Shown: positions 11,601 through 61,572, counted from the first letter of the stretch. The stretch is 64,000 bases of DNA from Macrostomum lignano (GCA_002269645.1 NIVC01000215.1:248001-312000), one strand, 5' to 3'. A program made the numbers and translations. Notes: a model not told the origin generated them from the sequence alone.

Positions 11601-11683
<83 letters not shown>

Positions 11684-16829: not shown

Positions 16830-17455
<626 letters not shown>

Positions 17456-19827: not shown

Positions 19828-20612
<785 letters not shown>

Positions 20613-35694: not shown

Positions 35695-37981
35695 CTAATC
35701 GCAGAATAAAGTTTCCACCGTCTCTACCATTGAATTTCGTTGCGTTTTTTTGAACAGCCCAACAAATTTTCGCCAGTAGCGCAAAAGATCTGCAAACATT
35801 TGCCAGATGAAAATTATGTGATCGAACCGGGTCAATTGGTGCACCAAATCGAAGTTGGCCGCGATGCTGTTGAACTCGTTAGACACGTAGGCGATGAGGA
35901 AGTTCTGTATGTTGATGGTGACTATCAGAACGAACATCGTGTGCAGCATGGCTGTTGAAGGTCGAGCCTGGGACAAGTTGGCCGTGTTGACGAAAATCCT
36001 CAGTGGCGAGTAGAACACGGAGAAGTGCGACTCGAACTCGGCCTTGTCGAAGTCGACCATGAAGAAGAGCGTGCCGAACACAAAGTAGGCCCAGATGAGG
36101 AACAGGGGCACGGCCGCGATGAACCGGCTGAACATCTTGCGAAAGCAGATTCCCAGGAAAGCGAGTCGTTTAAACCTCAACTCGAAACCGCCGGTGAAGC
36201 AAAGCATGGCGAAGAACATGTACATCACAGCGGAGCCTTCTGTCACGTGTATAGCCCAGCTATTAGCATATCTTTTCGACCTGTCGAATACAAAGCCGGT
36301 GCAGTCGAGGGAGCTCATAAGCAACATTGAGCCAATCAGATGCTGCAAGCCACAAATAAGCATTGCCGCCATTGAGACAGGGATGATTTCGTTCCTGACG
36401 AAGTACTCACCCCGGACTTTAAACCGGCTATCAATGCGGTACAGAGGAGATCTTTTTGCCAGACTAAATTTTGCTACTCCAAAAAGCAAAGCTAAAAACT
36501 TAATAAAAAGAATGCAGGCAATAACATATTGATTGATGATGATATTTGACACCACATTCCTCCTAGTAGCGCAGTAGAAGTAGATTGGCGATGTCTTCAC
36601 GCACTCAGCGCCTCGAGATCCGTTTTTCAGGAACCTGACGAGGTTATCTGAGCGGCAGGCACTTCGCACAGCATCTTCATTTCTGGCATTTGAACTATTT
36701 TCATTTGCGTTCATATTAGGGAGAAATTCTTCTTTAATTTCATTTGCAAAGTCATCGAAGCCTTTGTCCAATTCATAAGCATGCTGAGCCATCGCGACAA
36801 TCATTTTGAAGTTAAATGACAACGGAGTCAGCTGAAAAAGCAAAAATCCAAAAAACATCGACACTGCCAAGTATGTCCATCTCATATCCAGGTAAATTAT
36901 ATTAATCCACTTGTCAACAAGAAGGCCAGCCTGCATCAGGTTCGATCTTCTCAGCGCCGGCACCTGCTGCATTCGAGTTTCGTTCAGCATTAGAATCGGA
37001 GTCTTGCCTCTTCTGACCCCGGATGTCATGTCATATTCCGATAGGTTGTACTTTTTATACACTCGAGTGCCTGTCAAGTGTTCTTCAATCTTGATGTAGT
37101 TGTCCACTTCAGCAATTTTTTGGAATGTGCTGTACGCCCCGATTTGCATAGCGAACTCAATTGGTCTCAGGCCGGCTTTGTTCTCCATCAGGCAGAGCGC
37201 GTGAAGAAACGATTTGGGCTGCCTGTGGGTGTCGAAAAGAATGGGAATCATCTGATTGGTAATGCAAACAATAAAAGGCTTTTGAAAACTTGTTGCAATC
37301 TAGATATTTCAATAAACAGCTAGCTAGATAAACAGCCGTCTAGATTGAAATCAATTTAAATCGGACTCCTCGGAATGAACTCCAGATGGCTCACTCTGTC
37401 CCGACTGGCAAGCCGCAGTATCCGGCCGCTGTCTCCTTGTCGCAGCTGCAGTTGGGCTCACCGACCTCGGCCAGGATTTTGAACGCGCCCGACTCGAACT
37501 CGTCCAGCAGCTGCAGCTCCGCCTCGGACGGCTCGCCGCCTCGCCGACCCTCTCGCAGGACTCGAGCCTTGGCCAGCGAGTGCAGAAGGTTGCTGCCGTC
37601 TGCATCGTCCAGAACGGCGAGCGACTTCCAGCAGCAACAGTCGGCCAGAGTCTTTCTGACCAGGAATTCCAGAGTTTGCCCAGCCGAGTAGTGAACTGCC
37701 AGGTGGTGCATCCGGCCGGATTCCGTCTCTGCATCGCTGCTGCTGGGCATGTGGAATGTCAAGCGGTGGTGGAGCAACCGATCTGGTGGAATTTGAGCCA
37801 ACTCGAGCTCTGCTGCCAGCTTTTCAGGCTGGTCTCTGCGGATGAGAGCAGCCAGAGAAAGAGAAAGTCGGTTGTCCAGCACACCGCTATCATCGACAGA
37901 ATCCTGCTCTGGAAGCCTTGAGCCGGACTCCGAATCTTCCTGTGTCGCAGGAGCTACACGTATTTGCTTTGACGCAGCCAT
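35695..37981 (-). CDS. TRPV-like cation channel, copy A, about 704 aa; exons 37981-37395 and 37222-35695
   Basis: Phase-2 junction GA|GTGAG...CCCACAG|G; ankyrin-like MHHLAV and DGSNLLHSL; ENKAGLRPIEFA and KYNLSEYD parallel TRPV N..GLTP and LYDL..ID; six hydrophobic segments; S6 NIQNFLIAYVS parallels MLNLLIAMMG. Confidence 0.8.
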
Positions 37982-38753
37982 AATCTGTCGAATATTTTAT
38001 GCCTATAAATTATTCGACAGAGAGCATGTCTTTCTGGACCGAACGAAGCTTTTTTAAAAGCTGCTTTGTTTGTCTAATAGCCAATTAATTCTACGATTTT
38101 TCCTGCTAACTCAATTTGATTAGCGAAATAGGAATGGAAAAGACATATTTGACCATTTTGCCTAACCTCGTGTGTGTGGTCCATACTGCAGTCACCAATC
38201 ATTAATTTATTAGCCTTTCGTTCAATATTTGCGTATCTTCTATGAATACGAATCGAGGCGCTTGGGTCAATAAGGCGTATATTGTTTGAGCTGATCTTTA
38301 GCTACAGTGGCAATGCATGCAACTCTTATTTTGACCAAATGGATTTCTGTCTACTCAACAGATTTGGCTACGCACTGCAATCTTCTAAGCATCATGGATA
38401 TTTGACTACAGTACGATTATGTAAATTCATGGGGTCATATCATAAACCCGAAATATCATAACTCCGAAAACCAAAATAGTGTTGGACATTGCTAGAAATT
38501 TCGGAGCTACATGTATGATATTACGGGTTTATGATGGAAAGCGCTTTTCGGAGTTGTGATTTTTCGGGTTTCTGATGCCCCCTCCCCGAATAAGTCATGA
38601 CTAATCGGTAATCGCCTAGACAACTTGGTATTAATTTGATATATGAGAGACAGCTAATTGTAATCCTTATTCATTTTAACTGTTCCAGTTAGCACTGATC
38701 TGCATACAATTTAAGTACTTTAGTACCCATAAATAATTTCCACGTCGGGCACC

Positions 38754-41293
38754 TGTTGTACTTTGAGGCAGCGTGGCCAAATGAACAAGGTGCGAGAAGC
38801 GATTGCAGGGTAGAAAAAGTCACAAAGGCTTGAAAGGCCTGTGCGCACTTATATTATAGTTAAACTAACTAGCATGATTCAGCAAACATCAAAACCCCCC
38901 ACCCGGCCTAGGCCGCTCTGGGCAGACAGACAAACCCCCAGCCAATTAGAACGCAAGAACTCTAGGCGGCGTGCAAGCCGCATACACAACAACATCCCCC
39001 TTCGAAAAAGCAACGACAAGCACGACGCTGAAGTTGTTCAACAGGAGGCGGTCGTTCCATCGGTGGATGCGCAGCGACATGGGCCCGGTGCCTTGGGTAC
39101 ACAGCAGTGCCTTGAGAGCCGAATGGTCAGTGCGCAAAGTCAGCCGTCTGCCGTAGGTGTAGATGTGCCAGCGCTCGAGAGACCAGATGCACACCAGAGC
39201 CTCTTTCTCGCTAGCTGAGTATCTGGACTCCGTTGGCGTCAGTGCTCGCGAGGCGTAGGCCACTGGCTTCTCGTTGGCCTACGCGTTGAAGCAGCACAGC
39301 GCCAAGCGCGAAGTCAGACGCGTCACACTCGACGATGGTGTCAGCGTTGCAGTCGAAGTGGCTTAGCACCGCGGACTCGTCAGCTGTTGCCTGAGCTCGG
39401 CAAAAGCAGCGTCACACTCGCTCGTCCAGTGAAAGACAGTGTCCTTGAGCAGCTCTCGTAGTGGTCTCGCTGTCTTGGCGAAGTCAGGTATGAACTTGTC
39501 GAAGTAGTTGACGGTTGACAGGAATGACGAGACGGTGCCTACTGCCGGGGTCCAGCTTGCAGAAGATCTGCGCGCCTGCAAACTCTGCGGCCAGCTCCTC
39601 CTGGGTCGGCACGGGAAACTTATCCGGGTTGATCGCTTGGTTGCAGTTGCGCGGATCAACGCACAGTCGCAGGTCGCCATTCTTCTTAGATACGACTAGA
39701 TTGGACACCCAGGGAGAGGCATCGATCTTCTCGATGACACCTGCGGCCTCCATCTTGCTTAGCTCGTCCTTCACGCGGTCCTGAAGTGCCAGCGGCACCC
39801 GGCACAACGGCTAAACTGTTGGTGTCACATTCTGGCGCAGCTGTGGTCGATGGCAAAACTTCTTGGCCATACCGATACCGTCAAAGATTCCCGTTAACTC
39901 TCCAGCGATATCATCGATGTTGCTGATTGCGTTGACTCTGATTGAGAATCCCAGCTTGTCCATGCCGTCGAGACCGAGGATGTTGGCACCTCGTCGTGCA
40001 ATGAAGAAGCGGCAGATGGCGGACTTGCCGCGGTGCACAACGCACAGCTCTGCTATCCCGAGCACGTCAATTGCAATTAGCTTCGGAGTCGGCGTGATGA
40101 CCGGTTGCTTCGGCAAGCGTTTCACAGTCTTCTCGTTGATGATGTTGATTCTTGAGCTCGTATCCAATAGGAGCCCTGACGTCGATGTCAGCAATGCTGC
40201 TCGTCGCGAAGTTAAGAAGCGACGTTTCATATTCTACTGTAGATACTTCGAATGGCTCATCATCTTCGTCCTTTACAGTGCGAAGCTGGCGTCGCTGTCG
40301 GCAGCAAGCTTTGAAGTGTCCGACCTTGTCGCAGTGCAAGCAGGTCTTGTCCTTCGCTGGACACTCTAAGGCGCGGGCGGCATGCCCGGCCCTCCCGCAG
40401 TTGCCGCACCGTGACTCTGCGCCGGATTTCTGCGGTGCCGCATGCTTGGGTCCCTTGCGTGATGGCGTACGCTGGCTGACCTTCTGGATGCGGGACTCGT
40501 CCTTGTCGCTCTTGCTGTCGCGCAGCTTCTTGGCGTCGTTGATTGCAGATTCGACTTGAATCGCCAATGCCATCGCCCTATCCAGCTCGAGCTCCGTCTC
40601 AATGAGCAGTCGCTCTCGAATGCGCGGCGAATGGGTCTTCTCGATGATCTGGTCCCGGATCATCTGGTCATGGAGAGCGCCGTATTCGCAGTCTGCCGCG
40701 AGTTCTCGGAGGGCGTCGACGAACTGGCTAACTGGCTCGCCTGGCGCGCGACTTGAACTTGTAGCGGTTCTGATTGTGCTGTGCGACTGACCGAAGATCG
40801 TTTTCAGTGCAGCCACGAGCTTGTCAAACGTATCAACGCTCTTCGTGGGCAGATTCCTCAGCGCGTAGACTCTCTGGCCTTCTTCGCCTAGTAGATGAAA
40901 GAGAATCGCCTTCTTTCGTGCATCAAATGCTTCATTTAGGTCCAAGGCCTCCAGGTAAATCTTGAATCCTTCGATCCAACGATTCCAAGGCGTGTGTGGC
41001 TGTCCTGGGTGGGCGAGAAACACGCGTGGCTCGGAAATGCTCAGACTCGTCGCCATGTTGTACTTTGAGGCAGCGTGGCCAAATGAACAAGATGCGAGAA
41101 GCGATTGCAGGGTAGAAAAAGTCACAAAGGCTTGAAAGGCCTGTGCGCACTTATATTATAGTTAAACTAACTAGCATGATTCAGCAAACATCAAAACCCC
41201 CCACCCGGCCTAGGCCGCTCTGGGCAGACAGACAAACCCCCAGCCAATCAGAACGCAAAAACTCTAGGCGGCGTGCAAGCCGCATACACAACA
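38754..41293 (-). mobile_element. Ty3/Gypsy LTR retrotransposon, non-autonomous deletion derivative, 2540 bp
   Basis: 238-bp LTRs (38754-38991, 41056-41293; TG...CA; 3 differences); 5-bp TSD GCACC at 38749 and 41294; PBS TGGCGACGAG; PPT GAAGGGGGA near 38995-39003; gag, degenerate protease, partial RT and RNase H; no integrase. Confidence 0.96.
40067..41056 (-). CDS. Gag protein of the Gypsy element
   Basis: Open frame from MATSLS; Q..GE.V..FV..LRELA..CEYG...MIRDQII motif; two zinc-knuckle-like motifs (CGNCGRAGH...C, CLHCDKVGHFKAC). Confidence 0.85.
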   Translation of the reverse strand: MATSLSISEPRVFLAHPGQPHTPWNRWIEGFKIYLEALDLNEAFDARKKAILFHLLGEEGQRVYALRNLPTKSVDTFDKLVAALKTIFGQSHSTIRTATSSSRAPGEPVSQFVDALRELAADCEYGALHDQMIRDQIIEKTHSPRIRERLLIETELELDRAMALAIQVESAINDAKKLRDSKSDKDESRIQKVSQRTPSRKGPKHAAPQKSGAESRCGNCGRAGHAARALECPAKDKTCLHCDKVGHFKACCRQRRQLRTVKDEDDEPFEVSTVEYETSLLNFATSSIADIDVRAPIGYELKNQHHQREDCETLAEATGHHADSEANCN

Positions 41294-41845
41294 GCACCAT
41301 CACTTTGTTATATTCTTGATTACTAGATAGCTATAAGAGAAATTTGTGACTGGATGTGAGATCTGAGAAACAGACACACACGTATCTGATCGGTATCGGC
41401 GTCTGATCACATTGCATAGACCCTCTCTGTTCGGACATGAAAAATTGGTGCTTGCATGTTCACTTGCGTCTAAACCAATCATCGGATCAAGTGCAATTGC
41501 GCGTACTTGCAGCCTTGCCACTTCATCTACCATAGACTAAGAGAAGAACAATGAAATAAAAGTTGTCATTTCAATATAGATTCGAATTCATCTTCGAGTC
41601 TCTCTTAGCTCGCAAATGCTACAATTATATTGCATACGAGCTAGCTACAAATGCTTCATGCTTGATAAACGCAGCAACTGTCTGTGGCATTCAAAGCTGA
41701 TTTGACGTTAATACGTTGTCATATCTCCTTCCAACTAAATAGTTGCAGACATTTTTGTGCTTGTCATCATAAAGTCTAAATTAAGAGTAAGAGTGATTTT
41801 GTTATCAAATCTAATAATTAAGTAATTCAGGAGAGCAACAATCCG

Positions 41846-44800
41846 ATGCATTCTGATTCGGTTGAAGACGATCCCATTAAGACGATGGCTTCAAAGTGCC
41901 CGATGAAAGATTCGCTGAACAAAGTCGAGTCACGAAGTGCCGTCCGCGGTTATGTGAGCGACGATCCACAACTTCCGGAACGGGAGCTCGCGTTTTACCT
42001 AGTCGCCATGCTGTCCATTGTCATCTATGCTGGCTACGGGTTTTACGTCACCTATGGGCACGACATGACGCAAAGTGAGCTGTTAATTGAAAATCGAAGA
42101 TGACACACTCCGAACTACTTGTAGCTAGTTCTTGCAGTTGGAAAATATTCTGATGATTAGGTTCTCTGGACTCGTATTTTGTAAGCTGCAAACGAATGCT
42201 GTTGACGCTACAATTTTTAGATCTTCCGGTTCAAGCATTAAAACGCGGTTGGATGAGAGATTACAAGGTAATCTAACTTTATAATTGTGTATTGATTTTT
42301 TCGTTATTACCAAATTTTGTTCCTCAAATTTATTCCACAGGACATTGTTGTTCACCCGATGTTTGAACAAGCGACTAACAACTGGCCTCAACTGACTCTG
42401 GCGTCTGCTGGTTTTCTCATAGTTAGCAAAGCGTCGCTGGCATTTGCGCCAATGAATGTCAGTCTCCTTTTTACTAAAGATCATAGTGTCATAAGTTCGC
42501 AAACAGAATAGACTGGAGAAAAAGCAGGCGGTGCTCAGTCTGAAACTCGGGTTACATTCTCGGGTACGTCAGTGGCCTTCAGCTGCACACACTTGAGCAG
42601 CTTGCTGGTGCAGTCAGCAAAGAATTCTTCGGGTGTCCTCTGTACCCCCTCTCGTAATAACTCTGTGCGGACAGGTTGCTGTAGTGCTTTCCCCACACGG
42701 TGGTTCCTCATCTCTAGGAGCAGTCAGTAATCGCTGCGAGCCAGGCCATCAGGTTTTGCGCCCATGAACAACGAACGTGTCATTCCCAGCTGCTTCCCCG
42801 ACAATGCGGTGAAAGAGATCTTCAGTGGAATGTCCAAGAAGTACTCAAACTGTCGAAGCTTCGATCTGCATCCAGCACCTGCTGTTCATGATGCACGTTT
42901 CTTACCATTGCAGTTTGATCGTTGCTGAGCAGCGCCAGTATACGCGCAGCATCCAAGCCGTCATCTAACCACTGAAGATACACTTTGACACCGTCTGTTC
43001 TGCTTTCGAAAGATGCTGCTTTGAAATTTAAAGTAGTTTGTAGAGAGGGTAAAATTGGGGTTTAGGTCACTATTTAATAAATCATCATTAAATGGCGGTT
43101 TATTTGTGTCTTGTGAAATCGAGCTGCCAGCTTTTGTCGGCGAACTTACGACATAATATTTTTAATATTTTTGGCACTTTCTAACGGCAGAAAAATCATA
43201 AACGTTGCTTACCATCGTACCAACCCTAGGTGCATCATCTGGCTTGCTCAATTTATACTCTGCTCATGATTAGCATCGCCCTGTCGTCCAAAGCTGCGTT
43301 CGCACTAGTCTTCCTGTACACTGTCTGCCTCTCCTTAGCCTACTTCTCTAATCCCGCTGTGTGGATCTTACCTAGCGCTCTGCTCTACTCTTTCAGTCGC
43401 GTAGAAGTGTCTGCAGTCCTGCTTTCTGCTCTGGAAATCCAGGATGATAAATTGAATACCTTTTCGGCAATGTCCAGCTACCTAATGTGCCGCCTGATCT
43501 CGCTTGGTCACACGTTGAGAACGGAGGTGAGTGAGCAGCCCTGTGGATTTAGGCAATATTTGCTCAACAATGTTCCTCTGAGTCTGGCCTACACTTTCTA
43601 CATGCCATACACGTGGTCCGGACCGATTCTCACTTTTGACGCGTTTCGCAAACAGCTGCAATCTCGCGGTCGTCGTGTTGAAATTGACAGCAATACTATT
43701 TCTGTTGTGGCATGGCGCGTGTGCCGCATGGTGCTGTGGTACTACGTTCTGGAGATGATCTATCACTACTTGCCAACGGGATCTTACCTGCTCACACTCC
43801 AACCCGATGTACCCATCGTGTACAAGCATATGTCCTTTTCTATCTACATACACGGTCAGAGCTTTATGCTTCTCTGCATTCAGTACTTCGGATGGCCAGC
43901 CGTCCTTGCTCTGCTCGATGGTGTTGAGCTGTTTCACTGGCCAGACTGCATCAGCTGGGTGTACAGCTACAGCATCATGTGGCGCGTGTTTGACCGAGGT
44001 TTGTTCTCAGTGATCCAGGAACACATCTACAGGCCTCTTGGAGGCAGTCGCCGGGGTCCATTGCGACAATTTTTAGCTCTGGTTGCTTCCTTCCTTTTTG
44101 TCTGCATCTTCCACGGCGACAGCGCGAGCAGTCGAGCCTGGGTGACGCTGAATGTGGTTCAGTTGGTGATGGAGCGGCTGATGATTTTTGTCTATTATAA
44201 ATATCTGAGATGCGCTGTTGTGAGTCAATTATTGCTTGTGCGGGATCTTATTTGGTTGCGTATGCATTGCATATACTCGTAAATACTTGCACCATCTTTC
44301 AGACTAAGTACCTGAGTCCTCAGAATGAGAAGCGACTCACTGGCTACGTCATCGCTTGGAATATGACAGTCTCCTGCGGCATAATCTTCTTCTTACTAGC
44401 CGGCACGAACGGCTTCATCATTTTTCCCGAGCTGCTGCTACTGCGCTCGATGAGTTCGCATAGTGAGTTTTGCTTTCACTAATTGTTGTCGACTGTCCAT
44501 CGGTGCTTTCGTACTAACTTACTAATTACTATTGAAAATATACTTTTCCTTGCTGTAATTTAGTAATATACAATATTAATAATTAAACTTTATTTTACGA
44601 GTAGTATTTCATATCAGTATAATAATTATTATTATATCGACCCGGCGGAAGTCGTGGTGGTCGCCCATGTCGGTGTACTTGGCTGATTTGCGGACCTCGA
44701 CCGAGGTGGCAGGTGACTTGGCCCAGGTGTGCGTGATAGTCGCGTCCCAAGCCAATGGCAGCCCGCTCTCAAGAGCCGCCACCGTGGCGCCGTCGAAGCG

Positions 44801-51536: not shown

Positions 51537-53853
51537 TTAAGCCATTCCGTCTTGTGGTTTTTCTAAATCAGCAAAAGAAATTTCCTTTGTTTCCACAAAG
51601 TAGCGCCGTTCTGTTTTGTAGAAATGGTCAACAAATCGGCGCCAATGCTTGAGAATGCCGCCCCACATTTGCCAGGTAACGGTTACGTGGTTGAACCGGG
51701 TCAATTGGTGCACCAAATCGAAGTTGGCCGCGATGCTGTTGAACTCGTTAGACACGTAGGCGATGAGGAAGTTCTGTATGTTGATGGTGACTATCAGAAC
51801 GAACATCGTGTGCAGCATGGCTGTTGAAGGTCGAGCCTGGGACAAGTTGGCCGTGTTGACGAAAATCCTCAGTGGCGAGTAGAACACGGAGAAGTGCGAC
51901 TCGAACTCGGCCTTGTCGAAGTCGACCATGAAGAAGAGCGTGCCGAACACAAAGTAGGCCCAGATGAGGAACAGGGGCACGGCCGCGATGAACCGGCTGA
52001 ACATCTTGCGAAAGCAGATTCCCAGGAAAGCGAATCGTTTGAACCTCAATTCGAAACCGCCGGTGAAGCAAAGCATGGCGAAGAACATGTACATGACAGC
52101 GGAGCTTTCCGTCATTATGGTTAACCAAGTGTTTGGGAATTTCTTCGCTCTGCCGAGTACAACATCCGTGCAGTCGAGCGATCTCATAAGCAACATTGAG
52201 CCAATCAGATGCTGCAAGCCACAAATAAGCATCGACACCATTGAGACAGTGATGAATTCGTTCCTGACGAAGTACTCACCCCGGAATTTAAGACGGCTAT
52301 CAATGCGGTACAGAGGACAACTTTGCGCTCGTATTGCCGCAGCCAGTCCAAACAGCAACATCGCCAACTGTGCGACTAGCAGAGCAACCATGGTATAGTG
52401 GTTGACAGAGATGTTCGCCATCACGTTTGCTCTGCTGACAGGGTAGAAATAAATTGGCGAAATCTTCAGATATTCATCTCCTCGAGATCCGTTACTGAGG
52501 TACCTGATGAGATTAGCCGGATAGCAGGCACTTCGCACTGCGTCTTCAATGTTGCTGATGTTTGAAACTATTTCGTTTCCATTCGTAATGAATTCTTCTT
52601 TAATCTTGCCTGCAAATTCGTTGAAGCCCTTTTCAAGTTCGTAGGCATGCTGCGCCATAGTGACAATCATGATAAAGTTCAACGACAGCGGAGTAAGTTG
52701 GAAAAACAGAGTCCCGTAGTAAACCTGCGCCAGCAGGTAAGTCCACATCAAGTCTCTGTACATCAAATCAATCCACTTGTCAACAAGAAGGCCAGCCTGC
52801 ATCAGGTTCGATCTTCTCAGCGCCGGCACCTGCTGCATTCGAGTTTCGTTCAGCATTAGAATCGGAGTCTTGCCTCTTCTGACGCCGGAAGTCATGTCAT
52901 ATTCCGATAGGTTGTACTTTTTATACACTCGAGTGCCTGTCAAGTGTTCTTCAATCTTGATGTAGTTGTCCACTTCAGCAATTTTTTGGAATGTGCTGTA
53001 CGCCCCGATTTGCATAGCGAACTCAATCGGTCTCAGGCCGGCTTTGTTCTCCATCAGGCAGAGCGCGTGAAGAAACGATTTGGGCTGCCTGTGGGTGTCG
53101 AAAAGAATGGGAATCATCTGATTGGTAATGCAAACAATAAAAGGCTTTTGAAAACTTGTTGCAATCTAGATATTTCAATAAACAGCTAGCTAGATAAACA
53201 GCCGTCTAGATTGAAATCAATTTAAATCGGACTCCTCGGAATGAACTCCAGATGGCTCACTCTGTCCCGACTGGCAAGCCGCAGTATCCGGCCGCTGTCT
53301 CCTTGTCGCAGCTGCAGTTGGGCTCACCGACCTCGGCCAGGATTTTGAACGCGCCCGACTCGAACTCGTCCAGCAGCTGCAGCTCCGCCTCGGACGGCTC
53401 GCCGCCTCGCCGACCCTCTCGCAGGACTCGAGCCTTGGCCAGCGAGTGCAGAAGGTTGCTGCCGTCTGCATCGTCCAGAACGGCGAGCGACTTCCAGCAG
53501 CAACAGTCGGCCAGAGTCTTTCTGACCAGGAATTCCAGAGTTTGCCCAGCCGAGTAGTGAACTGCCAGGTGGTGCATCCGGCCGGATTCCGTCTCTGCAT
53601 CGCTGCTGCTAGGCATGTGGAATGTCAAGCGGTGGTGGAGCAACCGATCTGGTGAAATTTGAGCCAACTCGAGCTCTGCTGCCAGCTTTTCAGGCTGGTC
53701 TCTGCGGATGAGAGCAGCCAGAGAAAGAGAAAGTCGGTTGTCCAGCACACCGCTATCATCGACAGAATCCTGCTCTGGAAGCCTTGAGCCGGACTCAGAA
53801 TCTTCCTGTGTCGCGGCAGCTACACGAATCAGTTTCGGTGCTGCCATCGTCAT
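51537..53853 (-). CDS. TRPV-like cation channel, copy B, about 714 aa; exons 53853-53261 and 53088-51537
   Basis: Paralogue of 35695-37981 with the same intron and motifs; open throughout. Confidence 0.8.
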
Positions 53854-54554
53854 GTCCCGATTTTAAGTGGCTTTGCTTCACCCATAGCTGACTTGCTTAA
53901 ATAGTCATTTCCCAGCCTTCCCTTGCCTATCACCAACTTTGATTAATCTTCAGAAAGCTTTTAAGTTAATGAGTTAGTTTGTAGACTAAGGCCATTTTTG
54001 GTAGTGCAATTTCGGCTAATCAATCAGTGAGTCCATTGTTGTGCTATTCAGCTATACATTTGCTGCCATCAAATCGGTTAGTTGCATTTGTTGTTGCCGT
54101 TGAATAAGAGTCCAATCTTCATAATTGTTTGCTTGACGTAATTGAATTGTCGTTTCCTCTGATCAACTGCATAGAAATCAGTCTAAATGATTGTTTTCTC
54201 TGCTGGAAAAAACATGGGAAGTCGATCGATGGGAAAACGGTGTTTTGTGTTTACTCACGCTGCTGCGTCGCCGTGGGGGTTGCCTTCGACTTCGTAAAGA
54301 CTCGCAAATCAGCAAGCAGACTTAATTCTACCTGATTCAGTTCGCGTAGCTCGAGTGGTTCTTTCATGTAGATGATTGAATGATTCTTGCTAAGCGTCCT
54401 CTGCGGCACTCGGCAAACCCCAGAACTGTTTTCACTTTACCCCTCTCTTGTCGGGAGGTAAAGGGTTACTCGCATATAGGTCATTATTGTCGAGACTAGA
54501 AATTTTATCGCCGTCAATGTTCGCGTAATTAATTACGCGAATCATCATGCGGCT

Positions 54555-55005
54555 ACCGGACATTTGCCCTCCGGCATTTGCCCTCCGGACATTTGCCCTC
54601 CGGCATTTCCCCTCCGGACATTTGCCCTCGAGGACATTTGCCCTCGGGGACATTTGCCCTCCGGACATTTGCCCTCCGGACATTTGCCCTCGGGGACATT
54701 TGCCCTCGGGGACATTTCCCCTCCGGACATTTCCCCTCTGGAAAAGTACAGGTAAGGCTGGGGATAGGGTAGGGCGGGTATATATTGCTTACTAGAAAAG
54801 GATGAGTTGTTGGCTGGAGAAGAACCTGATGGATGCAAGAGGCGGGAGGATGAGGTTGGTGCTGGAGGAACGACGGGTGGGTACAGGAGGAGGTGAGGTG
54901 AGTAATGTGCGAGGGGGTAAATTTGCAGAGGGCAAATGTGCGGAGGGGAAATGTCCGGAGGGCAAATGTCCCCGAGGGCAAATGTCCTCGAGGGCAAATG
55001 TCCGG
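54555..55005. repeat. Palindromic minisatellite element with inverted arms
   Basis: CCGGACATTTGCCC(T/C) units at about 54555-54738 and inverted GGGCAAATGTCCGG units at about 54925-55005; GTCGATGGGAAAACG...TTTACTCACGCT occurs directly repeated near 54225 and 55005. Confidence 0.85.
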
Positions 55006-55394
55006 TCGATGGGAAAACGTTTTTGTTTACTCACGCTCACATATTCTATTATATAGAATCACTGCCAACGTGCGGCTATAATCTACGCAATAGTAGTGAA
55101 CGTTGGTCGGGAGGGCTATAGCTAGTCAGAGAAAAGCGTAAAGACGTAGAGGGGCGTGTATTACATCTCTCCTGCAGCCAAAAAAATTACAAGCCTATAA
55201 CTCGATAATTTCGCAGATAAGCGGAATGAGCTTTCCGAACAGTTATGCCAATCAGCCAATCAGCCAATCAGCCAATCAGTTAAATTTACGTATGCATGTA
55301 CATGTGATTTGTTTAGGGTGCGTGCAGCCGTGTTGCTATTGCCTTGTGGTTTGCTGGCATGTCGTCATGCAGCAGTAGACCTTCCAGAGGCCGT

Positions 55395-56215
55395 CGCAAA
55401 ATTTCGGTCACCACCTGGCGGAGCGCCGATTTAAAGTAGCAGCGTCGCGCGCGCCGTCTGCTGGCCACCAACTTTCAGCCGAGCTCCGACGGCTGCTGAA
55501 CGTCCGCCTCTCCTGCTGTGTCTGCCGTTTGCTGTTGGCCGGCTGAGAGTAGTGTCTCTCTCGTACCACCACCTCCGATATCCTGGTGCTGGCGTCTCCT
55601 TTACAGATCCGCCTGCACCTGCCGCGCCACGCCGGGCCACCAGAATTTTCTCCCGCCGATCTGATGCTGGTGGGCCCAACTGATGGTCTGCTGCTGAAGC
55701 CCTGCGGGTACAACTATCCTGCTGCCCCTGAGCAGCATGCCGTCACGCACCCTGAGCTTTCCGTTGAGCGAGTGGAAGCTGCCGGGCGGGGCTGTAGCGC
55801 CGGAGCGCCAGTTGCCAGTCGCCAGCGCCTGCATGACGAAGGTCAGAGCCGGGTCCCGCGCTGTGACCTCGAGTACGCTCTTGATGGTTGGGCCTTCCGG
55901 TGCGGACTTGACGGTGTTGAGCTGCTGCAGCAGTACTCCGTCCTGGGCCGGTTAATTGCTTATCGTTTGGAGCGTCGGTTGGCCTTGTAGCCCCTCTGGC
56001 CAGTGCCCAGGGATTCGTCCCCAGACTCAGGATCTCGAGGTTGCACGGCCGAGCACACTGGTGCCGCTCCGTGGGACGATGATGAAGCTAGCTGGCGCGC
56101 TGGACATGAGAAAATCCTCTTTGTCGTTGGCTGCAGGCCTGCGGGTCCCGGGAGCTTGCGACAGGCTGTCTCAGTGAAGACGCTGTCCACCAGCACCTGT
56201 ACTGGAGTCACTTTC
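55395..56215 (-). mobile_element. Degraded Gypsy pol fragment (RNase H end and integrase zinc-binding region)
   Basis: DSLSQAP (cf. ADALSRLP) near 56160; LRVRDGMLLRGSRIVVPAGLQQQTISWAH...WWPGV at 55601-55834; multiple frameshifts. Confidence 0.75.
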
Positions 56216-56828
56216 AATAACACGTTGACAAGAGCCGATGCACGTTTGTGTCGGATAACATCACGGAGTACTACAAGGAGTAAATTAGCATTTGTATTGT
56301 GTGTAGAAATTCTGAGGAGCAGCTTTAGTTGTGCCACATACAAAACTGAGGCAGAATTTGTCTTGTCTTTCATAGCGTGGAACTTCTCATGTTGCCAGGT
56401 TTATTTTACTGTGGGTTTACCAACAAATAAATTATGAGCATACGAGTATTGTACTTATAATTTATGTAATTGTACAAGAATACGTAGACAAAATCAAAAT
56501 GCAGACTGTTGAGCTTAAATTAAGCTTTTGGCTTCTGATGATACTCATCTCAATGGTTGGATTTACTGTTCAGTAACAGAATTATTTAGCAGGAAATGGT
56601 GTAAACAAATCTTCACGATCCATCGCGCGGTTGGACTGTTCTGAATTCTGTCTGATGTCTATGGCTTTTTCTTTTTCAAATTCAGCTACAATTTTATGTC
56701 TATGGCTGGAGCAAATCTTTATAAGCAGCTTCGATTTTTCTAAACCCATCGCTGTATAACGTCTCTCTCTAACTGTCTGACTTTCAATCTGTGCTTTTTT
56801 TATCTAAACCACCAAAAAGGACAGCAGC

Positions 56829-59800
56829 ATGCAAGACCGAGAAAGCATGGAAGCTGAAGTTACTAAACAATCTGAATCAAAGTGCCCAATGTACGACTCG
56901 ACCACAAAGACCAAACAGCAGCAGAATCCAATTCATGGATTCGTCTCTGATGATCCTCAGTTACCGAAACGGGAGATTGCTTTCTACCTGGTCGCGCTGG
57001 TGTCAATCATCGCCTACGCTGGCCACGGGTTTTATCTCACGTACGGAATCAACCTGCATGAAAGTGAGTTAGTTGTTTTCTTCTATGCTTTAGCCACATT
57101 GTTTTGGATCGACTAATAATACACATTTTAACAGTGTTTTGGGCAGAACCACAGATACTAGAATAACTAGATGGGTCACTCAGAAAATTTGCGTGTAAGC
57201 TACTTTCAGTTTAGTAGCGAGTTAAACTGAAGCATTTTAATGCATTTTTAAAGCCAATGCTTATTTATTGGCTCTTACCCTCCAGCCTTAAACTCTCAAA
57301 CCACGCCTTTCCACGCTGCCCCCACCCCGCGCACCTCAATTTTTATTGCCTTCCTCGGAATTCCAACTAGCTCGTTCTTGCGAAGTAATTTCGATGATAG
57401 AGGCCAAAGATGCGATTAAATCAAATTCACTTTGTACACTTTTGTCTATGTGTGGCCCATTGTAGTAGTGTAGCTCATTTAATTATGGCTCCTTTTTCTA
57501 TTGGTATTTCGAATGAAAGCTCAGAATCCACTAGAGAATTAATTTATGACAGTTAGGCTAGTCGCCTTTACTGTCCTTTCCAATTACCATAGACGATTGA
57601 CTGATTATCTCTATTCTTCTCTTTCAAAGTGCCATAGACAGAAGAATTGACTAGAAATCCGGGCAAACAATCACATTTGATACAAAAGGGTACAATAACG
57701 ACATTAGATTCTTACGCGGCAGCAATTGCGTAAGCTAAAAATCCGTATATATCGTAATTACATTACATAAGGGTTAGTAGCAACGTCTGAGTAAAAACAT
57801 TTCACTTCTCCTAAAAACTCTCTAGCTGTTAAAAGGTATGTTAAAAACAACAGATACATGAACAACATCAACATTATCGATAAAATAGGCAACAGAAACA
57901 TCAAAAACAATATTATCAACAACCACGACAACAGCAAAAAGCAAATTATCAAAACAACATATAAAACAGCGAAAAAACATTAGTAACAACAGTAAGTCCA
58001 TATCGACGAATACCAAGAAGGAGCAACAACGAAAAGGACCAGACATAAAAGGCATATTTAAATAAATTTGAACTTGAATGCCTCGAAAAATATCGACAGT
58101 AAAAACTCGAATCCATTTGAAAAATCTGTTAACAAATCATTTAATTGAAATTTTGTTAACATTTTAACAAAATTATTAACCCGGCGAATGTTCTTAAGGA
58201 ATTTGCCGAGACTGATAAGCTAAGCATTGTTCCTTCACTACCAATTAAAGTACAATCAAAGCCTTAGCTTTGGCCTAAAGTAAATTGATTCAATCACAAG
58301 CTGACGAGTGCTTCTGATCCTGATAGCTAACTGAGGGAGCGCACCAAACTTTACACAGTTCTCGAAGTGTATGGGAAATTTCGAGGGGCTTTAGCACCAA
58401 GGGGCTTTAGCACCAAGGGGCTTTAGCACCAAGGGGCTTTAGCACCAAGGGGCTTTAGCACCAAGGGGCTTTAGCACCAAGGGGCTTTAGCACCAAGGGG
58501 CTTTAGCACCAAGGGGCGCCAGCACCAAGGGGCGCCAGCACCAAGGGGCGCCAGCACCAAGGGGCGCCAGCACCAAGGGGCGCCAGCACCAAGGGGCGCC
58601 AGCACCAAGGGGCGCCAGCACCAAGGGGCGCCAGCACCAAGGGGCGCCAGCACCAAGGGGCGCCAGCACCAAGGGGCGCCAGCACCAAGGGGCGCCAGCA
58701 CCAAGGGGCGCCAGCACCAAGGGGCGCCAGCACCAAGGGGCGCCAGCACCAAGGGGCGCCAGCACCAAGGGGCGCCAGCACCAAAGGGCGCCAGCACCAA
58801 GGGGCGCCAGCACCAAGGGGCACCAGCACCAAGGGGCACCAGCACCAAAAAAAACATTGTAGACAAAGTTACTTGTAAATATTTCTATCAACTATTTGCT
58901 TCAGATCTACCGGCTGAGCTTTTGAAACCCGGCTGGATGCGCGATTTCAAGGTAAGCTTAAATTGAAATAATCAGCTTTGACTTTCACGTTTATAAAAGT
59001 TTTACCAATTTATTGTAAAAAAGCAAATCTATAAATCTGTCCCCAACGCAGGATGGCAGCGCTGATGCTCTGCTTGAAAAGTCGACAGAAAATTGGAAGA
59101 ATTTGTTGGTTGCATCAGCTGGATTTCTGTTTGTCAGCAAAGCTTCTTTGGCAACTGCGCCTATCGAGGTGAGCATATTGTACTTTTGTCATTGACGGAA
59201 AACTTTGTTTCTTAGAAAGTTTCAAAGGTCAGCCCATACAACCAATAAAACTCAGTCAATCCATGCATTTTCACCTTCAAATATTTTCTGAGAAAAAAAA
59301 TCGGCTTAACATTATTTTATTTAATGCGTACCTGACTTGAGTGTGCAAACGTGAACCCGAGATAACTACATGAAATCAATTCAAGTCAATTTTTAAACCT
59401 TGCAGTTGCACTACCTAGTTTGCTCCGCCTACGCTCTGATGCTCGTTTTTCTAGCTGTGTCATTCGAAGCCGTTCTGTGGCTGATAGTTGCCTATTTTGT
59501 AACTCTCTGTCTGGCCTACTGGTCTTTCCCAGCCGTGTGGATCTTTGTTGGCTCGCTGCTTTACGTCATGAACAGCCACGGTGCGGCGACACTGTTTCTA
59601 GACTACCTCAACATTGACGGTGACAGCGGGCCAACCTTTGCGGCCTTGTATGGCTACGTGCTCTGCCGATTTATCTCGCTTGGCCACGCTATGCAGCAAG
59701 AGCTGAGCGGTGAACTAAAAACTGCAGGATTCTGGCGGTACCTTCGCTCTAATTTGTTTCTAACTCTGCACTATTCGTTCTACATGCCCTACCTTTGGTG

Positions 59801-61572
59801 CGGACCAATTTTAACGTACGACGATTTTTGTAAACAGTTGAAAGTTCGAGCTCGCAACATCGCTGTTGATGGTCGGACGGCTAGTTTGGTCGCTTGGCGC
59901 GCCTGTCGGATGTTGCTTTGGTACTGCATTCTGGAGATTATCTATCACAATTTTCCAGTTGGAACCTATTTGGATCTTCTAAGTCCCGACGAGGCTATCG
60001 TGTACAAGCACCTGGCTTTTGCCATGTTTTTTCACGGTCAGATCTTCATGCTGCTGTACGTGCAGTACTACGGATGGCCGGCCGCACTCGCCCTTCTGGA
60101 CGGAATTCAGCTGTTCCATTGGCCAGACTGCATCAGCTGGGTGTACAGCTACAGCATCATGTGGCGCGTGTTCGACCGAGGTCTGTTCGCCATGATGCGG
60201 TCGCACTTGTATATACCGCTCGGTGGTAGCCGCCATGGCCCCGTCCGTCAAATGTTGGCCATCATGGCTACGTTTGCTTTCATCAGCTTGTTCCACGGCG
60301 ACTCGACCAACGTGCGTGCCTGGGCAGCGTTGAATTTTTGTCAACTGCTAATTGAACGTTGTGCCGCTTTTGTCTACTATAGTCACGCGAGAAGCATTGT
60401 GGTGAGTTCATTGCTAAGGTTTTTCAGAGCCAGAATCTAGTTCAAAGTCAGGGCATTTTAGCACAACCCTGCGTGACGGTTTGCCTGCGTGCGTATCCGC
60501 GTGAACGCGTGCTTCAATTCAGTCAGAGGCACAGACATGACTGCTTGTCTCTCTCGCTACTAGCTGACATGGGGCGAGTGTACATGTACCATGCGTACTC
60601 AATATTTTATCACAGAAACCTGCACTGTTATTAAATTATTTAAACCGTTATCATCTTTCAGACAAGGTACTTGAGTCCGCAAAACGAGAAGCGTTTAATT
60701 GGCTACATAATCGCTTGGAATATGATGGCCTCCTGCGGCATAATCTTCTTCTTTCTATCCGGCATGAACGGATTCATCATATTTCCGGAGTTTCTGCTTC
60801 TAAAATCAAATAGTCGCCACAGTGAGTTCGATTTATTTATTTTGATCAAGTTTATTTGCATGCAAATATTGTCTTAATTAAGATTCGATGGTTAGTAGCT
60901 CTGGGTGTAAGGATTCAGGATCTGGGTGAATGAATCTTGGACCCATCGATAGGAAGGACCTTGAACGACGATGATGTTAGCATACATCTATCTCTTCTAA
61001 TGGCTACAGAAATTTATACTCGTAGCTACACTATGTGTTTATGTATATATATTATAATACTATTTTGTGGTACTAATGGGGTCACTCGTACAGCAATCCG
61101 ACACGTCTGGGGTCTGGCCGACAAATTACATCGACATATTACGACATCATACGTCTACTGAATGTCGGTGCAACGTAAAAGTACATATTTGTCATCGAAC
61201 GCAGGATGTCGCCGACATCGGATTGCTGTACGGGTCGGTTTTCACAAGCTCGCGACATTTCACATCGTCGAAGAGGGTAAACTTCACAAGCTCGAGTTTT
61301 CATACGTGTAAGTTCGAAATTCATTGACAAAAGTGACTATAGGCAAAACTTTTGACAATATGAAAAATTTCGAACTTGGGAAGCTATAATAAATGTATCA
61401 CCAGAAGAAAATAACTTTCCCGCATCACAAAACGTATCCATTTCGATTGGATTTTGCAGCACCCGTGTGGCACATGCTGACCATGCAGTTTGCCGCCTAT
61501 TGTGCCGTTCAAATTGGCCGCTACTACGAGGCCAAATTAAAGCCGTCTCTGTGCAAGCACGTCAAGGAGTGA
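56829..61572 (+). CDS. MBOAT acyltransferase, HHAT/Rasp-like, copy 3, about 555 aa; exons 56829-57063, 58905-58951, 59052-59168, 59406-60401, 60662-60821, 61460-61572
   Basis: Same intron positions and phases as copies 1 and 2; catalytic FISLFHG; open throughout; most diverged copy. Confidence 0.88.
57845..58050 (+). repeat. AAC-rich low-complexity tract
   Basis: Degenerate (AAC)n in MBOAT-3 intron 1. Confidence 0.7.
58385..58846 (+). repeat. 16-bp minisatellite
   Basis: AGCACCAAGGGGCTTT units on the left changing to AGCACCAAGGGGCGCC on the right. Confidence 0.95.

What the first reader, a model, noticed from the sequence alone, without database searches (positions are those of the whole stretch)
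35695..61572. Duplicated head-to-head TRPV-like channel / HHAT-like acyltransferase cassette (2 channels, 3 enzymes, all intact)
Seen: order TRP-A(-) | MBOAT1(+) MBOAT2(+) TRP-B(-) | MBOAT3(+). Each channel is divergently paired with an MBOAT; TRP-A and MBOAT1 starts are about 1.3 kb apart once the LTR element is removed. All five frames are open while surrounding DNA is heavily invaded. Established: HHAT/Rasp acylate secreted proteins and are usually low-copy; TRPV channels are gated by lipids and acyl amides. Inference: a co-regulated module in which diversified acyltransferases make or modify ligands, or acylate the enlarged extracellular loop, of co-diversified channels. I know of no described system like this, but linkage could be passive.
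Basis: partly seen in the sequence, partly recalled or inferred. Interest (0 to 1): 0.8.

Follow-up and report, generated by a model that had tools for sequence, protein, structure and literature searches.

The report
Flatworm TRPV-like / HHAT-like gene cluster
A 26-kb stretch of the flatworm Macrostomum lignano genome does hold two intact TRPV-type ion-channel genes and three intact Hedgehog-acyltransferase-type genes in two head-to-head pairs, but the evidence fits an old local duplication kept similar by gene conversion, and nothing shows that the channels and enzymes work together.

Summary
The window is Macrostomum lignano contig NIVC01000215.1. Positions 35695-61572 hold TRP-A(-), a 2.5-kb LTR element, MBOAT1(+), MBOAT2(+), TRP-B(-) and MBOAT3(+). 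All five genes have open frames and GT-AG introns.

The enzymes are HHAT-type by sequence (E 2e-24), by fold (TM 0.82) and by four conserved HHAT residues. The channels have no direct Pfam or PDB hit. A family profile (TRPV6, E 3e-44) and an AF2 model (Foldseek top 50 all TRPV) show a divergent TRPV-type channel with a 93-aa S1-S2 loop.

A [channel(-) | MBOAT(+)] unit was duplicated long ago (dS saturated), and MBOAT1 then gave rise to MBOAT2. All genes are under purifying selection (dN/dS about 0.15-0.45). Ongoing gene conversion makes the ankyrin/linker region and the S5-pore-S6 of the two channels identical. S1-S4, the loop and the TRP helix stay anciently divergent.

The functional-module idea is untested, and indirect evidence leans against it:
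- The pairing occurs only here and on the homeologous contig.
- The two intergenic regions share no sequence.
- The transcript-based annotation lists the MBOATs but neither channel.

Interest is modest.

The parts
35695..37222 (-). TRP-A exon 2 (aa 196-704). It encodes the last ankyrin helices, the linker beta-hairpin, S1, the 93-aa S1-S2 loop, S2-S6, the pore helix, the TRP helix and a C-terminal beta-strand. The stop codon is at 35695-35697.
   Evidence: ORF. Splice acceptor cacag|G confirmed against P0001. AF2 model pLDDT 81, pTM 0.79. Foldseek top 50 hits are all TRPV.
37395..37981 (-). TRP-A exon 1 (aa 1-196). It encodes the N-terminal region with ankyrin-type repeats. The donor is GA|GTGAGC and the intron spans 37223-37394.
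   Evidence: UniProt labels the homologue P0001 ANK_REP_REGION. Pfam gave no hit.
37982..41845 (.). Divergent spacer between the TRP-A and MBOAT1 start codons (3864 bp; about 1.32 kb without the LTR element).
   Evidence: The homeologous contig has 1229 bp here. No similarity to the TRP-B/MBOAT3 spacer.
38754..41293 (-). Truncated LTR retrotransposon with gag and RT-RNaseH remnants. LTRs at 38754-38994 and 41056-41293. TSD GCACC at 38749-38753 and 41294-41298. It is a recent insertion, absent from the homeologue.
   Evidence: repeat D8, 98%; 237/241 identical, TSD; Retrotrans_gag and zf-CCHC weak hits; RT_RNaseH E 1e-17.
41846..45544 (+). MBOAT1, an HHAT-like acyltransferase of 556 aa. Exons: 41846-42074, 42221-42267, 42341-42457, 43230-44219, 44303-44462, 45417-45544.
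   Evidence: all GT-AG; 556/556 identical to P0005. Pfam MBOAT E 1e-13. AF2 model matches human HHAT 7q1u/7mhy at E 3e-14, TM 0.72/0.82.
47620..51077 (+). MBOAT2, an HHAT-like acyltransferase of 557 aa. Exons: 47620-47848, 48509-48555, 48681-48797, 48871-49860, 50687-50846, 50947-51077.
   Evidence: all GT-AG; 542/557 identical to the homeologous product P0004. Pfam MBOAT E 2.9e-11.
51537..53088 (-). TRP-B exon 2 (aa 198-714). Its stop codon lies 459 bp from the MBOAT2 stop, and the two genes converge.
   Evidence: Per-element identity to TRP-A.
53261..53853 (-). TRP-B exon 1 (aa 1-198).
53854..56828 (.). Divergent spacer between the TRP-B and MBOAT3 start codons (2975 bp). It holds 15/16-bp tandem arrays at 54556-55005.
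   Evidence: The homeologue has 3441 bp here.
56829..61572 (+). MBOAT3, an HHAT-like acyltransferase of 555 aa. Exons: 56829-57063, 58905-58951, 59052-59168, 59406-60401, 60662-60821, 61460-61572. Intron 1 holds a 16-bp x 28.5 tandem array at 58393-58848.
   Evidence: all GT-AG; 542/555 identical to P0002. Pfam MBOAT E 3.4e-17. PDB HHAT E 2e-24 with the Cys324, Trp335, Asp339 and His379 equivalents conserved. Tandem array.
36911..37887 (-). Gene-conversion tract 1 in TRP-A (partner in TRP-B, about 52777-53759). A and B are 98-100% identical here, intron included, and more alike than either is to its homeologue.
   Evidence: A-B 0.98-1.00 against A-A' 0.94-1.00 and B-B' 0.81-1.00. (dS about 0 over aa 20-300).
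35814..36213 (-). Gene-conversion tract 2 in TRP-A (partner in TRP-B, about 51683-52082). It covers S5, the pore helix and S6.
   Evidence: S5 0.98; pore and S6 1.00 aa identity.
43509..43736 (+). Gene-conversion tract in MBOAT1 exon 4 (partner 49150-49377 in MBOAT2). Aa 225-300 are identical with dS 0, while the homeologous MBOAT2' (P0004) differs here.
   Evidence: Compare the P0004 sequence with the MBOAT2 model.

Best explanation
This is an old tandem gene cluster, found only in Macrostomum lignano among the genomes that could be examined. It is built from two unrelated membrane-protein families.

History (inferred from divergence). An ancestral head-to-head unit [TRPV-type channel (-) | HHAT-type MBOAT (+)] was duplicated as a segment, giving TRP-A|MBOAT1 and TRP-B|MBOAT3. 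MBOAT1 was then duplicated in tandem to give MBOAT2. All of this happened long ago, because synonymous sites are saturated wherever conversion has not erased the signal. The whole five-gene array was copied again by the recent genome duplication of M. lignano (homeologues differ by dS about 0.06-0.09).

State of the genes (shown). All five are intact and under purifying selection. Non-allelic gene conversion within the locus is still running. It keeps the ankyrin/linker region, the intron and the S5-pore-S6 of the two channels identical. The S1-S4 domain, its large extracellular loop, the TRP helix and the C-terminus stay anciently different. A similar mosaic is seen between MBOAT1 and MBOAT2.

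Likely function (inferred from family membership). The channels are tetrameric cation channels that share one pore and one cytoplasmic domain but have two different sensor domains. The MBOATs are ER-lumen-facing protein acyltransferases with a complete HHAT active site.

The adjacency of channel and enzyme is most simply a legacy of the duplicated segment, that is, passive linkage. No functional coupling has been shown.
For: Gene models and integrity.

HHAT type:
- Pfam MBOAT E 1e-11 to 3e-17.
- PDB HHAT E 2e-24 with the equivalents of Cys324, Trp335, Asp339 and His379 conserved in all paralogues.
- AF2 model against HHAT E 3e-14, TM 0.82. The next-best hits (LPCAT3, PORCN, DltB) are about E 1e-3.

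TRPV type:
- phmmer relatives carry Ion_trans and ANK domains.
- The family profile matches TRPV6, 5, 3, 4 and 2 at E 3e-44 to 6e-31 in a single stretch from the ankyrin repeats to the TRP helix.
- AF2 model pLDDT 81. The Foldseek top 50 are all TRPV or Nanchung-Inactive.

Old duplication plus selection:
- MBOAT1/2 against MBOAT3: dS about 1.6-1.8, dN/dS about 0.2.
- TRP-A against TRP-B: dS above 1 over aa 300-545 and 660-704, dN/dS about 0.2.
- Homeologue comparisons: dN/dS 0.14-0.45.

Conversion:
- A and B are 98-100% identical, intron included, where A-A' is 94-100% and B-B' is 81-100%.

Passive linkage:
- The same five-gene order is found only on the homeologous contig.
- There is no TRP near the distant HHAT-like pair.
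- There is no MBOAT near the Lineus, L006 or L007 channel relatives.
- There is no TRP near Lingula or Elysia HHAT.
- The two spacers share nothing at E below 1.
- The annotation is transcript-based and lists the MBOATs but no channel gene.
Against: - Both head-to-head pairs have stayed intact and adjacent through saturating synonymous divergence.
- Both members of the duplicated unit were retained, which is what co-diversification would also predict.
- The negative synteny tests use only distant relatives (27% identity or less). No other Macrostomum genome was available.
- Absence of the channels from the annotation may reflect rare-cell expression rather than lack of co-regulation.
- The channels keep a family-conserved extracellular loop Cys although the turret Cys present in 36/39 relatives is deleted. 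That leaves a possibly free lumenal Cys, which an acyltransferase could in principle use.
Confidence: 0.62

Rival explanations
1. Biochemical module. The HHAT-like enzymes lipidate the channels themselves, for example on the enlarged S1-S2 loop, or they make lipidated secreted ligands that gate them. Enzyme and channel paralogues would then have diversified together.
For: - The head-to-head pairing is retained in both ancient copies and on the homeologue.
- Both families resist homogenisation in membrane-embedded parts despite active conversion.
- The S1-S2 loop is 93-94 aa, the longest of 41 family members, with N-glycosylation sequons.
- The loop carries a conserved Cys whose likely partner Cys in the pore turret is deleted in M. 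lignano only.
- The HHAT active site is complete.
- From established knowledge: the HHAT active site faces the ER lumen, and PORCN shows that an MBOAT can acylate an internal residue of a folded lumenal loop.
Against: - There is no independent recurrence of the pairing.
- Known HHAT/Rasp substrates are N-terminal cysteines of secreted proteins, not internal loop residues (established knowledge).
- The loop Cys is conserved in relatives that have no MBOAT neighbour.
- MBOAT copy number (3) does not match channel copy number (2).
- No expression or biochemical data exist.
Confidence: 0.13
2. Shared regulation only. Each spacer acts as a bidirectional or shared regulatory region, so channel and MBOAT are expressed in the same cell type, but the proteins do not act on each other.
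For: - The orientation is divergent, with 1.2-1.3 kb between start codons in the A pair (without the LTR) and 3.0-3.4 kb in the B pair.
- The arrangement has been retained through long divergence.
Against: - The spacers are longer than the usual limit of under 1 kb for bidirectional promoters, though TSSs are unknown.
- The two spacers share no detectable sequence.
- A 2.5-kb LTR insertion splits the A-pair spacer in this haplotype or subgenome while both genes stay intact.
- Transcript-derived gene models exist for the MBOATs but not for the channels.
Confidence: 0.2
3. Assembly or annotation artefact. The duplicated cassette would be collapsed or uncollapsed haplotypes, or a mis-join, and some of the genes would be pseudogenes.
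For: - The Mlig_3_7 assembly is redundant and PacBio-based.
- The homeologous contig shows 1-nt indels in TRP-B' and MBOAT1'.
Against: - The within-window copies are far too divergent for haplotypes (dS above 1 and 37-60% aa identity in S1, S2 and S4; MBOAT3 is 57-58% identical to MBOAT1 and 2).
- The same five-gene order is found on an independent contig.
- All five window genes have clean GT-AG models and dN/dS below 0.5.
Confidence: 0.02

Closest known systems
TRPV channels (vertebrate TRPV1-6; insect Nanchung/Inactive) and the sister TRPVL group
   Same: The architecture matches over the whole aligned length: ankyrin repeats, a linker with a beta-hairpin, six TM helices with a pore helix, the S6 motif NFLIA, a TRP helix, and a C-terminal beta-strand. 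The family profile hits TRPV6 at E 3e-44, and all top-50 Foldseek hits are TRPV.
   Different: - The M. lignano proteins have no direct Pfam or PDB sequence hit, and are only about 11-13% identical to solved TRPVs.
- The S1-S2 loop is 93-94 aa.
- The filter-position residue is Asn rather than Asp, as in 13 of 39 relatives.
- The turret Cys is lost.
- The TRP box is degenerate.
- The N-terminal region is shorter, and the number of ankyrin repeats was not determined.
- The nearest named relative is an uncharacterised Lineus longissimus protein (27% identity).
- Placement in TRPV as against TRPVL was not tested.
Hedgehog acyltransferase (HHAT / Drosophila Rasp)
   Same: The sequence matches HHAT at E 2e-24, and the fold matches at TM 0.82 with rmsd 4.0 over about 517 columns. 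The heme-Cys324, Trp335, Asp339 and His379 equivalents are conserved.
   Different: - M. lignano has at least five paralogues in two tandem groups, each doubled by the homeologue, instead of one gene.
- All are about equally distant from Lingula HHAT (24-26% identity), so none is an obvious one-to-one orthologue.
- There is an N-terminal extension of about 45 aa.
- The substrates are unknown.
Tandem gene arrays evolving by concerted evolution with protected divergent segments
   Same: The paralogues are mosaics. Tracts with dS about 0, including an intron, alternate with saturated tracts. The conversion is younger than the homeologue split.
   Different: Here the protected segments are the S1-S4 sensor domain and TRP helix of a channel and TM segments of an acyltransferase. 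Whether selection or chance sets the tract borders is unknown.
Bidirectional (head-to-head) gene pairs with a shared promoter
   Same: Divergent orientation is present in both pairs.
   Different: The spacing is 1.2-3.9 kb between start codons. The two spacers share no sequence, and there is no expression evidence.

Membership tests
TRPV-type TRP channel | Six-TM Ion_trans fold with S5, pore helix and S6, and a TRP-type S6 motif | tested here: met
   Profile A1 against PDB TRPV6, E 3e-44, spanning to the TRP helix. The AF2 model has S1-S6 and a pore helix. Foldseek top 50 are all TRPV. The S6 motif NFLIA is nearly invariant in the family.
TRPV-type TRP channel | Direct significant match of the protein itself to curated TRP/Ion_trans models or to solved TRP sequences | tested here: not met
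   No Pfam family at E 0.1 or below. phmmer against PDB gave only a chance hit at E 0.31. Membership rests on intermediate sequences.
TRPV-type TRP channel | N-terminal ankyrin repeat domain (six repeats in TRPV) | tested here: inconclusive
   The last repeats align to the C-terminal ankyrin repeats of TRPV6. UniProt labels P0001 ANK_REP_REGION. Pfam finds no ANK in exon 1. The repeat number was not determined because exon 1 was not modelled.
TRPV-type TRP channel | Linker beta-hairpin joined by a C-terminal beta-strand after the TRP helix | tested here: met
   The AF2 model has strands at 44-50 and 53-59, a TRP helix at 457-490 and a strand at 498-504 in exon-2 numbering. This is a predicted structure, not a solved one.
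TRPV-type TRP channel | Phylogenetic placement inside TRPV rather than TRPVL or another TRP family | not tested
   No reference TRPVL, TRPA or TRPC sequences could be obtained. The third homologue search returned only P0001.
TRPV-type TRP channel | Cation-channel activity | not testable with these tools
   Needs electrophysiology.
HHAT (Hedgehog acyltransferase) subfamily of MBOAT | MBOAT domain | tested here: met
   PF03062 at 43.7-63.2 bits, above the cut-off of 27, in all three genes.
HHAT (Hedgehog acyltransferase) subfamily of MBOAT | Closest to HHAT rather than PORCN, GOAT, LPCAT or DltB | tested here: met
   HHAT chains are the only PDB sequence hits at E 1 or below. Foldseek gives HHAT E 3e-14 and TM 0.82, against LPCAT3, PORCN and DltB at E about 1e-3 and TM 0.5-0.65.
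HHAT (Hedgehog acyltransferase) subfamily of MBOAT | Catalytic Asp339 and His379, heme-binding Cys324, and Trp335 (human numbering) | tested here: met
   The blocks PDCIS...MWRVFDRGL...FHGD are conserved in MBOAT1-3 and in P0006 and P0007.
HHAT (Hedgehog acyltransferase) subfamily of MBOAT | One-to-one orthology with HHAT; N-palmitoylation of Hedgehog | tested here: inconclusive
   Five paralogues are equally distant (24-26% identity) from Lingula HHAT. The substrate cannot be tested here.
Bidirectional-promoter gene pair | Head-to-head orientation with TSSs less than 1 kb apart | tested here: inconclusive
   The orientation criterion is met. Start codons are 1229-1320 bp apart in the A pair (3864 bp with the LTR) and 2975-3441 bp apart in the B pair. 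TSSs are unknown.
Bidirectional-promoter gene pair | Correlated expression of the two genes | not testable with these tools
   Only indirect evidence is available. The transcript-based annotation holds the MBOATs but not the channels. No expression tables were found.
Conserved functional gene cluster (microsynteny) | The same pairing recurs independently in paralogous loci or in other species | tested here: not met
   The pairing is present only on the homeologous contig. It is absent at L001, Lineus L005, L006 and L007, and at Lingula and Elysia HHAT. Close relatives, that is other Macrostomum species, were not available.

The most novel reading that the evidence does not exclude
The locus is a co-evolving enzyme-channel module. 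Each HHAT-like acyltransferase would lipidate its neighbouring TRPV-like channel in the ER lumen, or lipidate a secreted ligand for it. A candidate site on the channel is the family-conserved S1-S2 loop cysteine (TRP-A C385), which has lost its probable disulfide partner in M. lignano. The sensor domains and the enzymes would have diversified together, protected from the gene conversion that homogenises the rest of the genes. That would be the first protein substrate of an HHAT-type enzyme that is a multipass channel, and a new way of tuning TRP channels.
Probability: 0.1. Interest if true: 0.8.

Novelty: new member of a known kind. Interest (0 to 1): 0.3.

Why it matters
As it stands, the locus is a clean, well-resolved example of three things.
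- A very divergent TRPV-type channel subfamily in a free-living flatworm, a phylum whose parasitic members have lost TRPV (PMC5196486).
- An unusual multi-copy expansion of Hedgehog acyltransferase.
- Ongoing gene conversion that homogenises the pore and cytoplasmic domain of two channels while their sensor domains stay anciently different. That pattern suggests two sensors built on one pore.

If the channel-enzyme adjacency turned out to be functional, it would link MBOAT protein lipidation to TRP channel gating, which is not described. The present evidence does not favour that, so the finding mainly gives candidate genes for ordinary follow-up in a transgenic-capable model.

Tried and rejected
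- Direct family assignment of the channel ORFs by Pfam and by PDB sequence search found nothing. It was resolved through an exhaustive HMMER search, a profile and a fold comparison.
- The word-index homologue search for the channel found only the M. lignano fragment P0001, twice.
- My first guess at the intron, joining the two ORFs at the ATG of the 518-aa ORF, was wrong. The true acceptor is 29 nt downstream of that ATG, as P0001 shows.
- A greedy splice-site search mis-set the short MBOAT exons. It was replaced by a joint search.
- Literature and supplement searches for the Mlig gene IDs, HHAT in flatworms and M. lignano expression tables found nothing.
- The sigma-70 promoter/terminator scan of the spacer does not apply to a eukaryote and was ignored.
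- The haplotype or assembly-artefact explanation was rejected on divergence and on the independent contig.
- Ancient microsynteny of HHAT with a TRP gene was rejected for Lingula and Elysia.

Full report
**Origin of the window.** The channel ORF matches a UniProt entry of Macrostomum lignano at 93%, and the MBOAT ORFs match NCBI proteins BOX15_Mlig.... Locus L002 (GCA_002269645.1, contig NIVC01000215.1, 279846-303544) is 100% identical to window 31846-55544. The window is therefore about 248001-312000 of that contig in the Mlig_3_7 assembly of this free-living flatworm.

**Checking the observation.**
- TRP-A (minus strand) has two exons, 37981..37395 and 37222..35695. They are joined by a GT-AG intron (GA|GTGAGC ... 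CACAG|G). The junction VGTE|QPKS is the one in the UniProt model P0001. The product is 704 aa.
- TRP-B has the same structure (53853..53261 and 53088..51537) and gives 714 aa.
- Each MBOAT gene has six exons with conserved boundaries and only GT-AG introns. The products are 556, 557 and 555 aa with no internal stop. MBOAT1 is 556/556 identical to the NCBI protein P0005.
- The element between TRP-A and MBOAT1 is a truncated LTR retrotransposon at 38754-41293. Its 241-nt LTRs are 237/241 identical, it has TG..CA ends and a 5-bp target duplication GCACC, and it carries gag and RT-RNaseH remnants.
- Without the element, the two start codons are about 1.32 kb apart. The homeologous contig lacks the element and has 1229 bp.
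- The stated ends, 35695 and 61572, are exactly the stop codons of TRP-A and MBOAT3.

**What the enzymes are.**
- All three hit Pfam MBOAT above threshold.
- Against solved structures, the only sequence hits are human HHAT chains (E 2e-24). The alignment conserves the equivalents of heme-binding Cys324, Trp335, catalytic Asp339 and His379. The same blocks are present in all M. lignano paralogues.
- An AF2 model of MBOAT1 (pLDDT 74, pTM 0.74) matches HHAT at E 3e-14, TM 0.72/0.82 and rmsd 4 Å over about 517 columns. LPCAT3, PORCN and DltB follow at E about 1e-3.
- They are therefore HHAT-type enzymes with a complete active site.
- M. lignano has at least five such paralogues: these three, plus a tandem pair (P0007 and a 556-aa MBOAT gene that is probably P0006) on another contig. 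All are 24-26% identical to Lingula HHAT. This is an expansion seen here in M. lignano, not a set of ancient subfamilies.

**What the channels are.**
- The proteins themselves hit nothing in Pfam and nothing meaningful in PDB.
- An exhaustive phmmer search of 1.8 billion cluster representatives found 51 proteins at E 1e-3 or below. The best outside Macrostomum is an uncharacterised Lineus longissimus protein (E 7e-17, 27% identity). Most of the others examined come from unnamed eukaryotic contigs.
- Several of these relatives pass the Pfam Ion_trans threshold, and one carries sub-threshold ANK hits.
- A profile of 41 family members matches TRPV6, 5, 3, 4 and 2 at E 3e-44 to 6e-31. For TRPV6, TRPV5 and most TRPV3 chains the match is a single stretch from the C-terminal ankyrin repeats to the TRP helix.
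- An AF2 model of TRP-A exon 2 (pLDDT 81, pTM 0.79) shows ankyrin helices, a linker beta-hairpin, S1-S6 with a pore helix, a long TRP helix and a C-terminal beta-strand. All 50 best Foldseek hits are TRPV channels or Nanchung-Inactive, aligned over 480-550 columns.
- 'TRPV-like' is therefore justified at the level of architecture and fold. I could not test whether the family belongs to TRPV proper or to TRPVL.
- Three features stand out.
  - The S1-S2 extracellular loop is 93-94 aa, the longest of the 41 members, with N-glycosylation sequons.
  - A loop Cys is conserved in 37/41 members.
  - A turret Cys present in 36/39 relatives is deleted in both M. lignano proteins.

**History of the locus.**
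- MBOAT1 and MBOAT2 against MBOAT3 have dS about 1.6-1.8 and dN/dS about 0.2.
- TRP-A against TRP-B is a sharp mosaic. dS is about 0 over aa 20-300 and 545-650. It is saturated (above 1) over aa 300-545 and 660-704, where dN/dS is about 0.2.
- Mapped on the model, the identical parts are the ankyrin/linker region and S5-pore-S6 (98-100% aa). S1 (52%), S2 (37%), S4 and the S4-S5 linker (60%), the TRP helix (59%) and the C-terminus (50%) are old and divergent.
- A four-way nucleotide comparison with the homeologous copies was decisive. In the identical tracts A and B are 98-100% alike, intron included, while A-A' is 94-100% and B-B' is 81-100%. This is non-allelic gene conversion, and it has continued since the homeologues separated.
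- MBOAT1 and MBOAT2 show the same kind of mosaic: dS above 1 at aa 80-220 and dS 0 at aa 225-300, where the homeologous MBOAT2' differs.
- The most economical history is as follows. An ancestral [channel(-)|MBOAT(+)] unit was duplicated as a segment. MBOAT1 was then duplicated in tandem. All copies were retained under purifying selection.
- The whole array was later copied by the recent genome duplication. Contig NIVC01000421.1 carries TRP-A', MBOAT1', MBOAT2', TRP-B' and MBOAT3' in the same order. Homeologue dS is 0.055-0.095 and dN/dS is 0.14-0.45.
- On that contig, TRP-B' and MBOAT1' each carry a 1-nt indel, which may be real or a PacBio error.

**Is the pairing functional?** Because the two pairs descend from one duplicated unit, they are a single observation of adjacency. 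I looked for independent recurrences and found none.
- The distant HHAT-like tandem pair of M. lignano has no channel within 10 kb on either side.
- The Lineus relative sits in tandem with a second copy, inside the range of a globin gene, with no MBOAT in 22.5 kb.
- Two further relatives, one on a 713-kb and one on a 5.7-kb contig, have no MBOAT nearby.
- Lingula and Elysia HHAT have unrelated neighbours.
- The two divergent spacers share no similarity at E below 1. The A-B similarity stops about 20 nt inside the coding sequence, so the 5' flanks are not co-homogenised.
- Spacing is 1.2-3.4 kb between start codons, and in this copy an LTR insertion stretches it to 3.9 kb.
- The Mlig_3_7 annotation was built purely from transcript evidence, with new transcripts below RPKM 0.5 discarded (PMC5730564). 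It lists all MBOAT genes but neither channel on both contigs. The channels are therefore much less abundant in whole-animal RNA than their neighbours.

None of this excludes coupling. The relatives tested are distant, and no other Macrostomum genome was within reach. A possibly unpaired lumenal Cys in an enlarged loop is a concrete lead. The balance still favours passive linkage.

**Mechanism I commit to.**
- Shown: five intact genes, HHAT-type active sites, TRPV-type fold, an old duplication, purifying selection and ongoing conversion with sharp tract borders.
- Inferred: the two channels share one pore and one cytoplasmic domain and differ in the S1-S4 sensor and TRP helix. They probably respond to different stimuli and could co-assemble.
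- Inferred: the MBOATs are ER protein acyltransferases with diverged substrate preference.
- Inferred: the adjacency is historical.

I put about 0.62 on this reading, about 0.2 on shared regulation without biochemical interaction, about 0.13 on a true enzyme-channel module, and about 0.02 on an artefact.

**Novelty and interest.** Both gene families, tandem clusters and concerted evolution are all known. The specific subfamily, the HHAT expansion and the conversion pattern are new members or details. No literature on this locus or on HHAT expansion in flatworms was found. TRPV homologues in M. lignano have been noted before (PMC5196486). I score interest at 0.3. The module reading would deserve about 0.8 if true, but I give it about 0.1.

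Noticed in passing
window 36670-36672 (TRP-A C385; exon-2 residue 189) and the S5-pore turret, about 36070: The S1-S2 loop Cys is conserved in 37/41 family members. A Cys in the S5-pore turret is present in 36/39 relatives but is deleted in both M. lignano paralogues, so the loop Cys may be unpaired. TRP-B has no other Cys in the loop.
   Followed up: partly
L004 (NIVC01000421.1): TRP-B' exon 2 nt 810 and MBOAT1' exon 4 nt 866: Single-nucleotide indels relative to the window copies would shift the frame of two of the five homeologous genes. NCBI calls no gene for MBOAT1' there. I could not tell whether this is real pseudogenisation or a PacBio error.
   Followed up: partly
window 7850-8266 and 12341-13813 (-): Exons of a class-C GPCR (7tm_3 E 1.5e-35; ANF_receptor E 7e-57), that is a metabotropic-glutamate or CaSR-like receptor gene.
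   Followed up: no
window 3316-4623 (+): A 435-aa ORF with an MFS_1 transporter domain (E 1.6e-22).
   Followed up: no
window 24565-25713 (-): An uninterrupted 382-aa mariner/Mos1-type transposase ORF (Transposase_1, HTH_48). It may be a recently active DNA transposon.
   Followed up: no
window 20627-21578 (-): Glycine-rich ORFs, one of which hits the ALK/LTK glycine-rich domain (E 1e-9). They lie in a GC-rich, strongly AT-skewed block.
   Followed up: no
window 15744-17512, 19787-20503, 30068-30693, 54556-55005, 58393-58848: Long micro- and minisatellite arrays. They include about 800 bp of a trinucleotide repeat, about 700 bp of an 8-mer repeat, and a 16-bp x 28.5 array (98% matches) inside MBOAT3 intron 1.
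   Followed up: no
L005 (Lineus longissimus OU342994.1) 7058-8407 and 10001-12559: The nearest named relative of the channel is intronless. It sits in tandem with a second copy, inside the range of a globin gene on the other strand.
   Followed up: no
window 51078-51536: The MBOAT2 and TRP-B stop codons converge with only 459 bp between them, so their 3' UTRs may overlap.
   Followed up: no
window 28718-29479 (-): A 253-aa Cys-rich ORF with a signal-peptide-like start and no Pfam hit. By eye it looks C-type-lectin or PAN-like, but this was not tested further.
   Followed up: no
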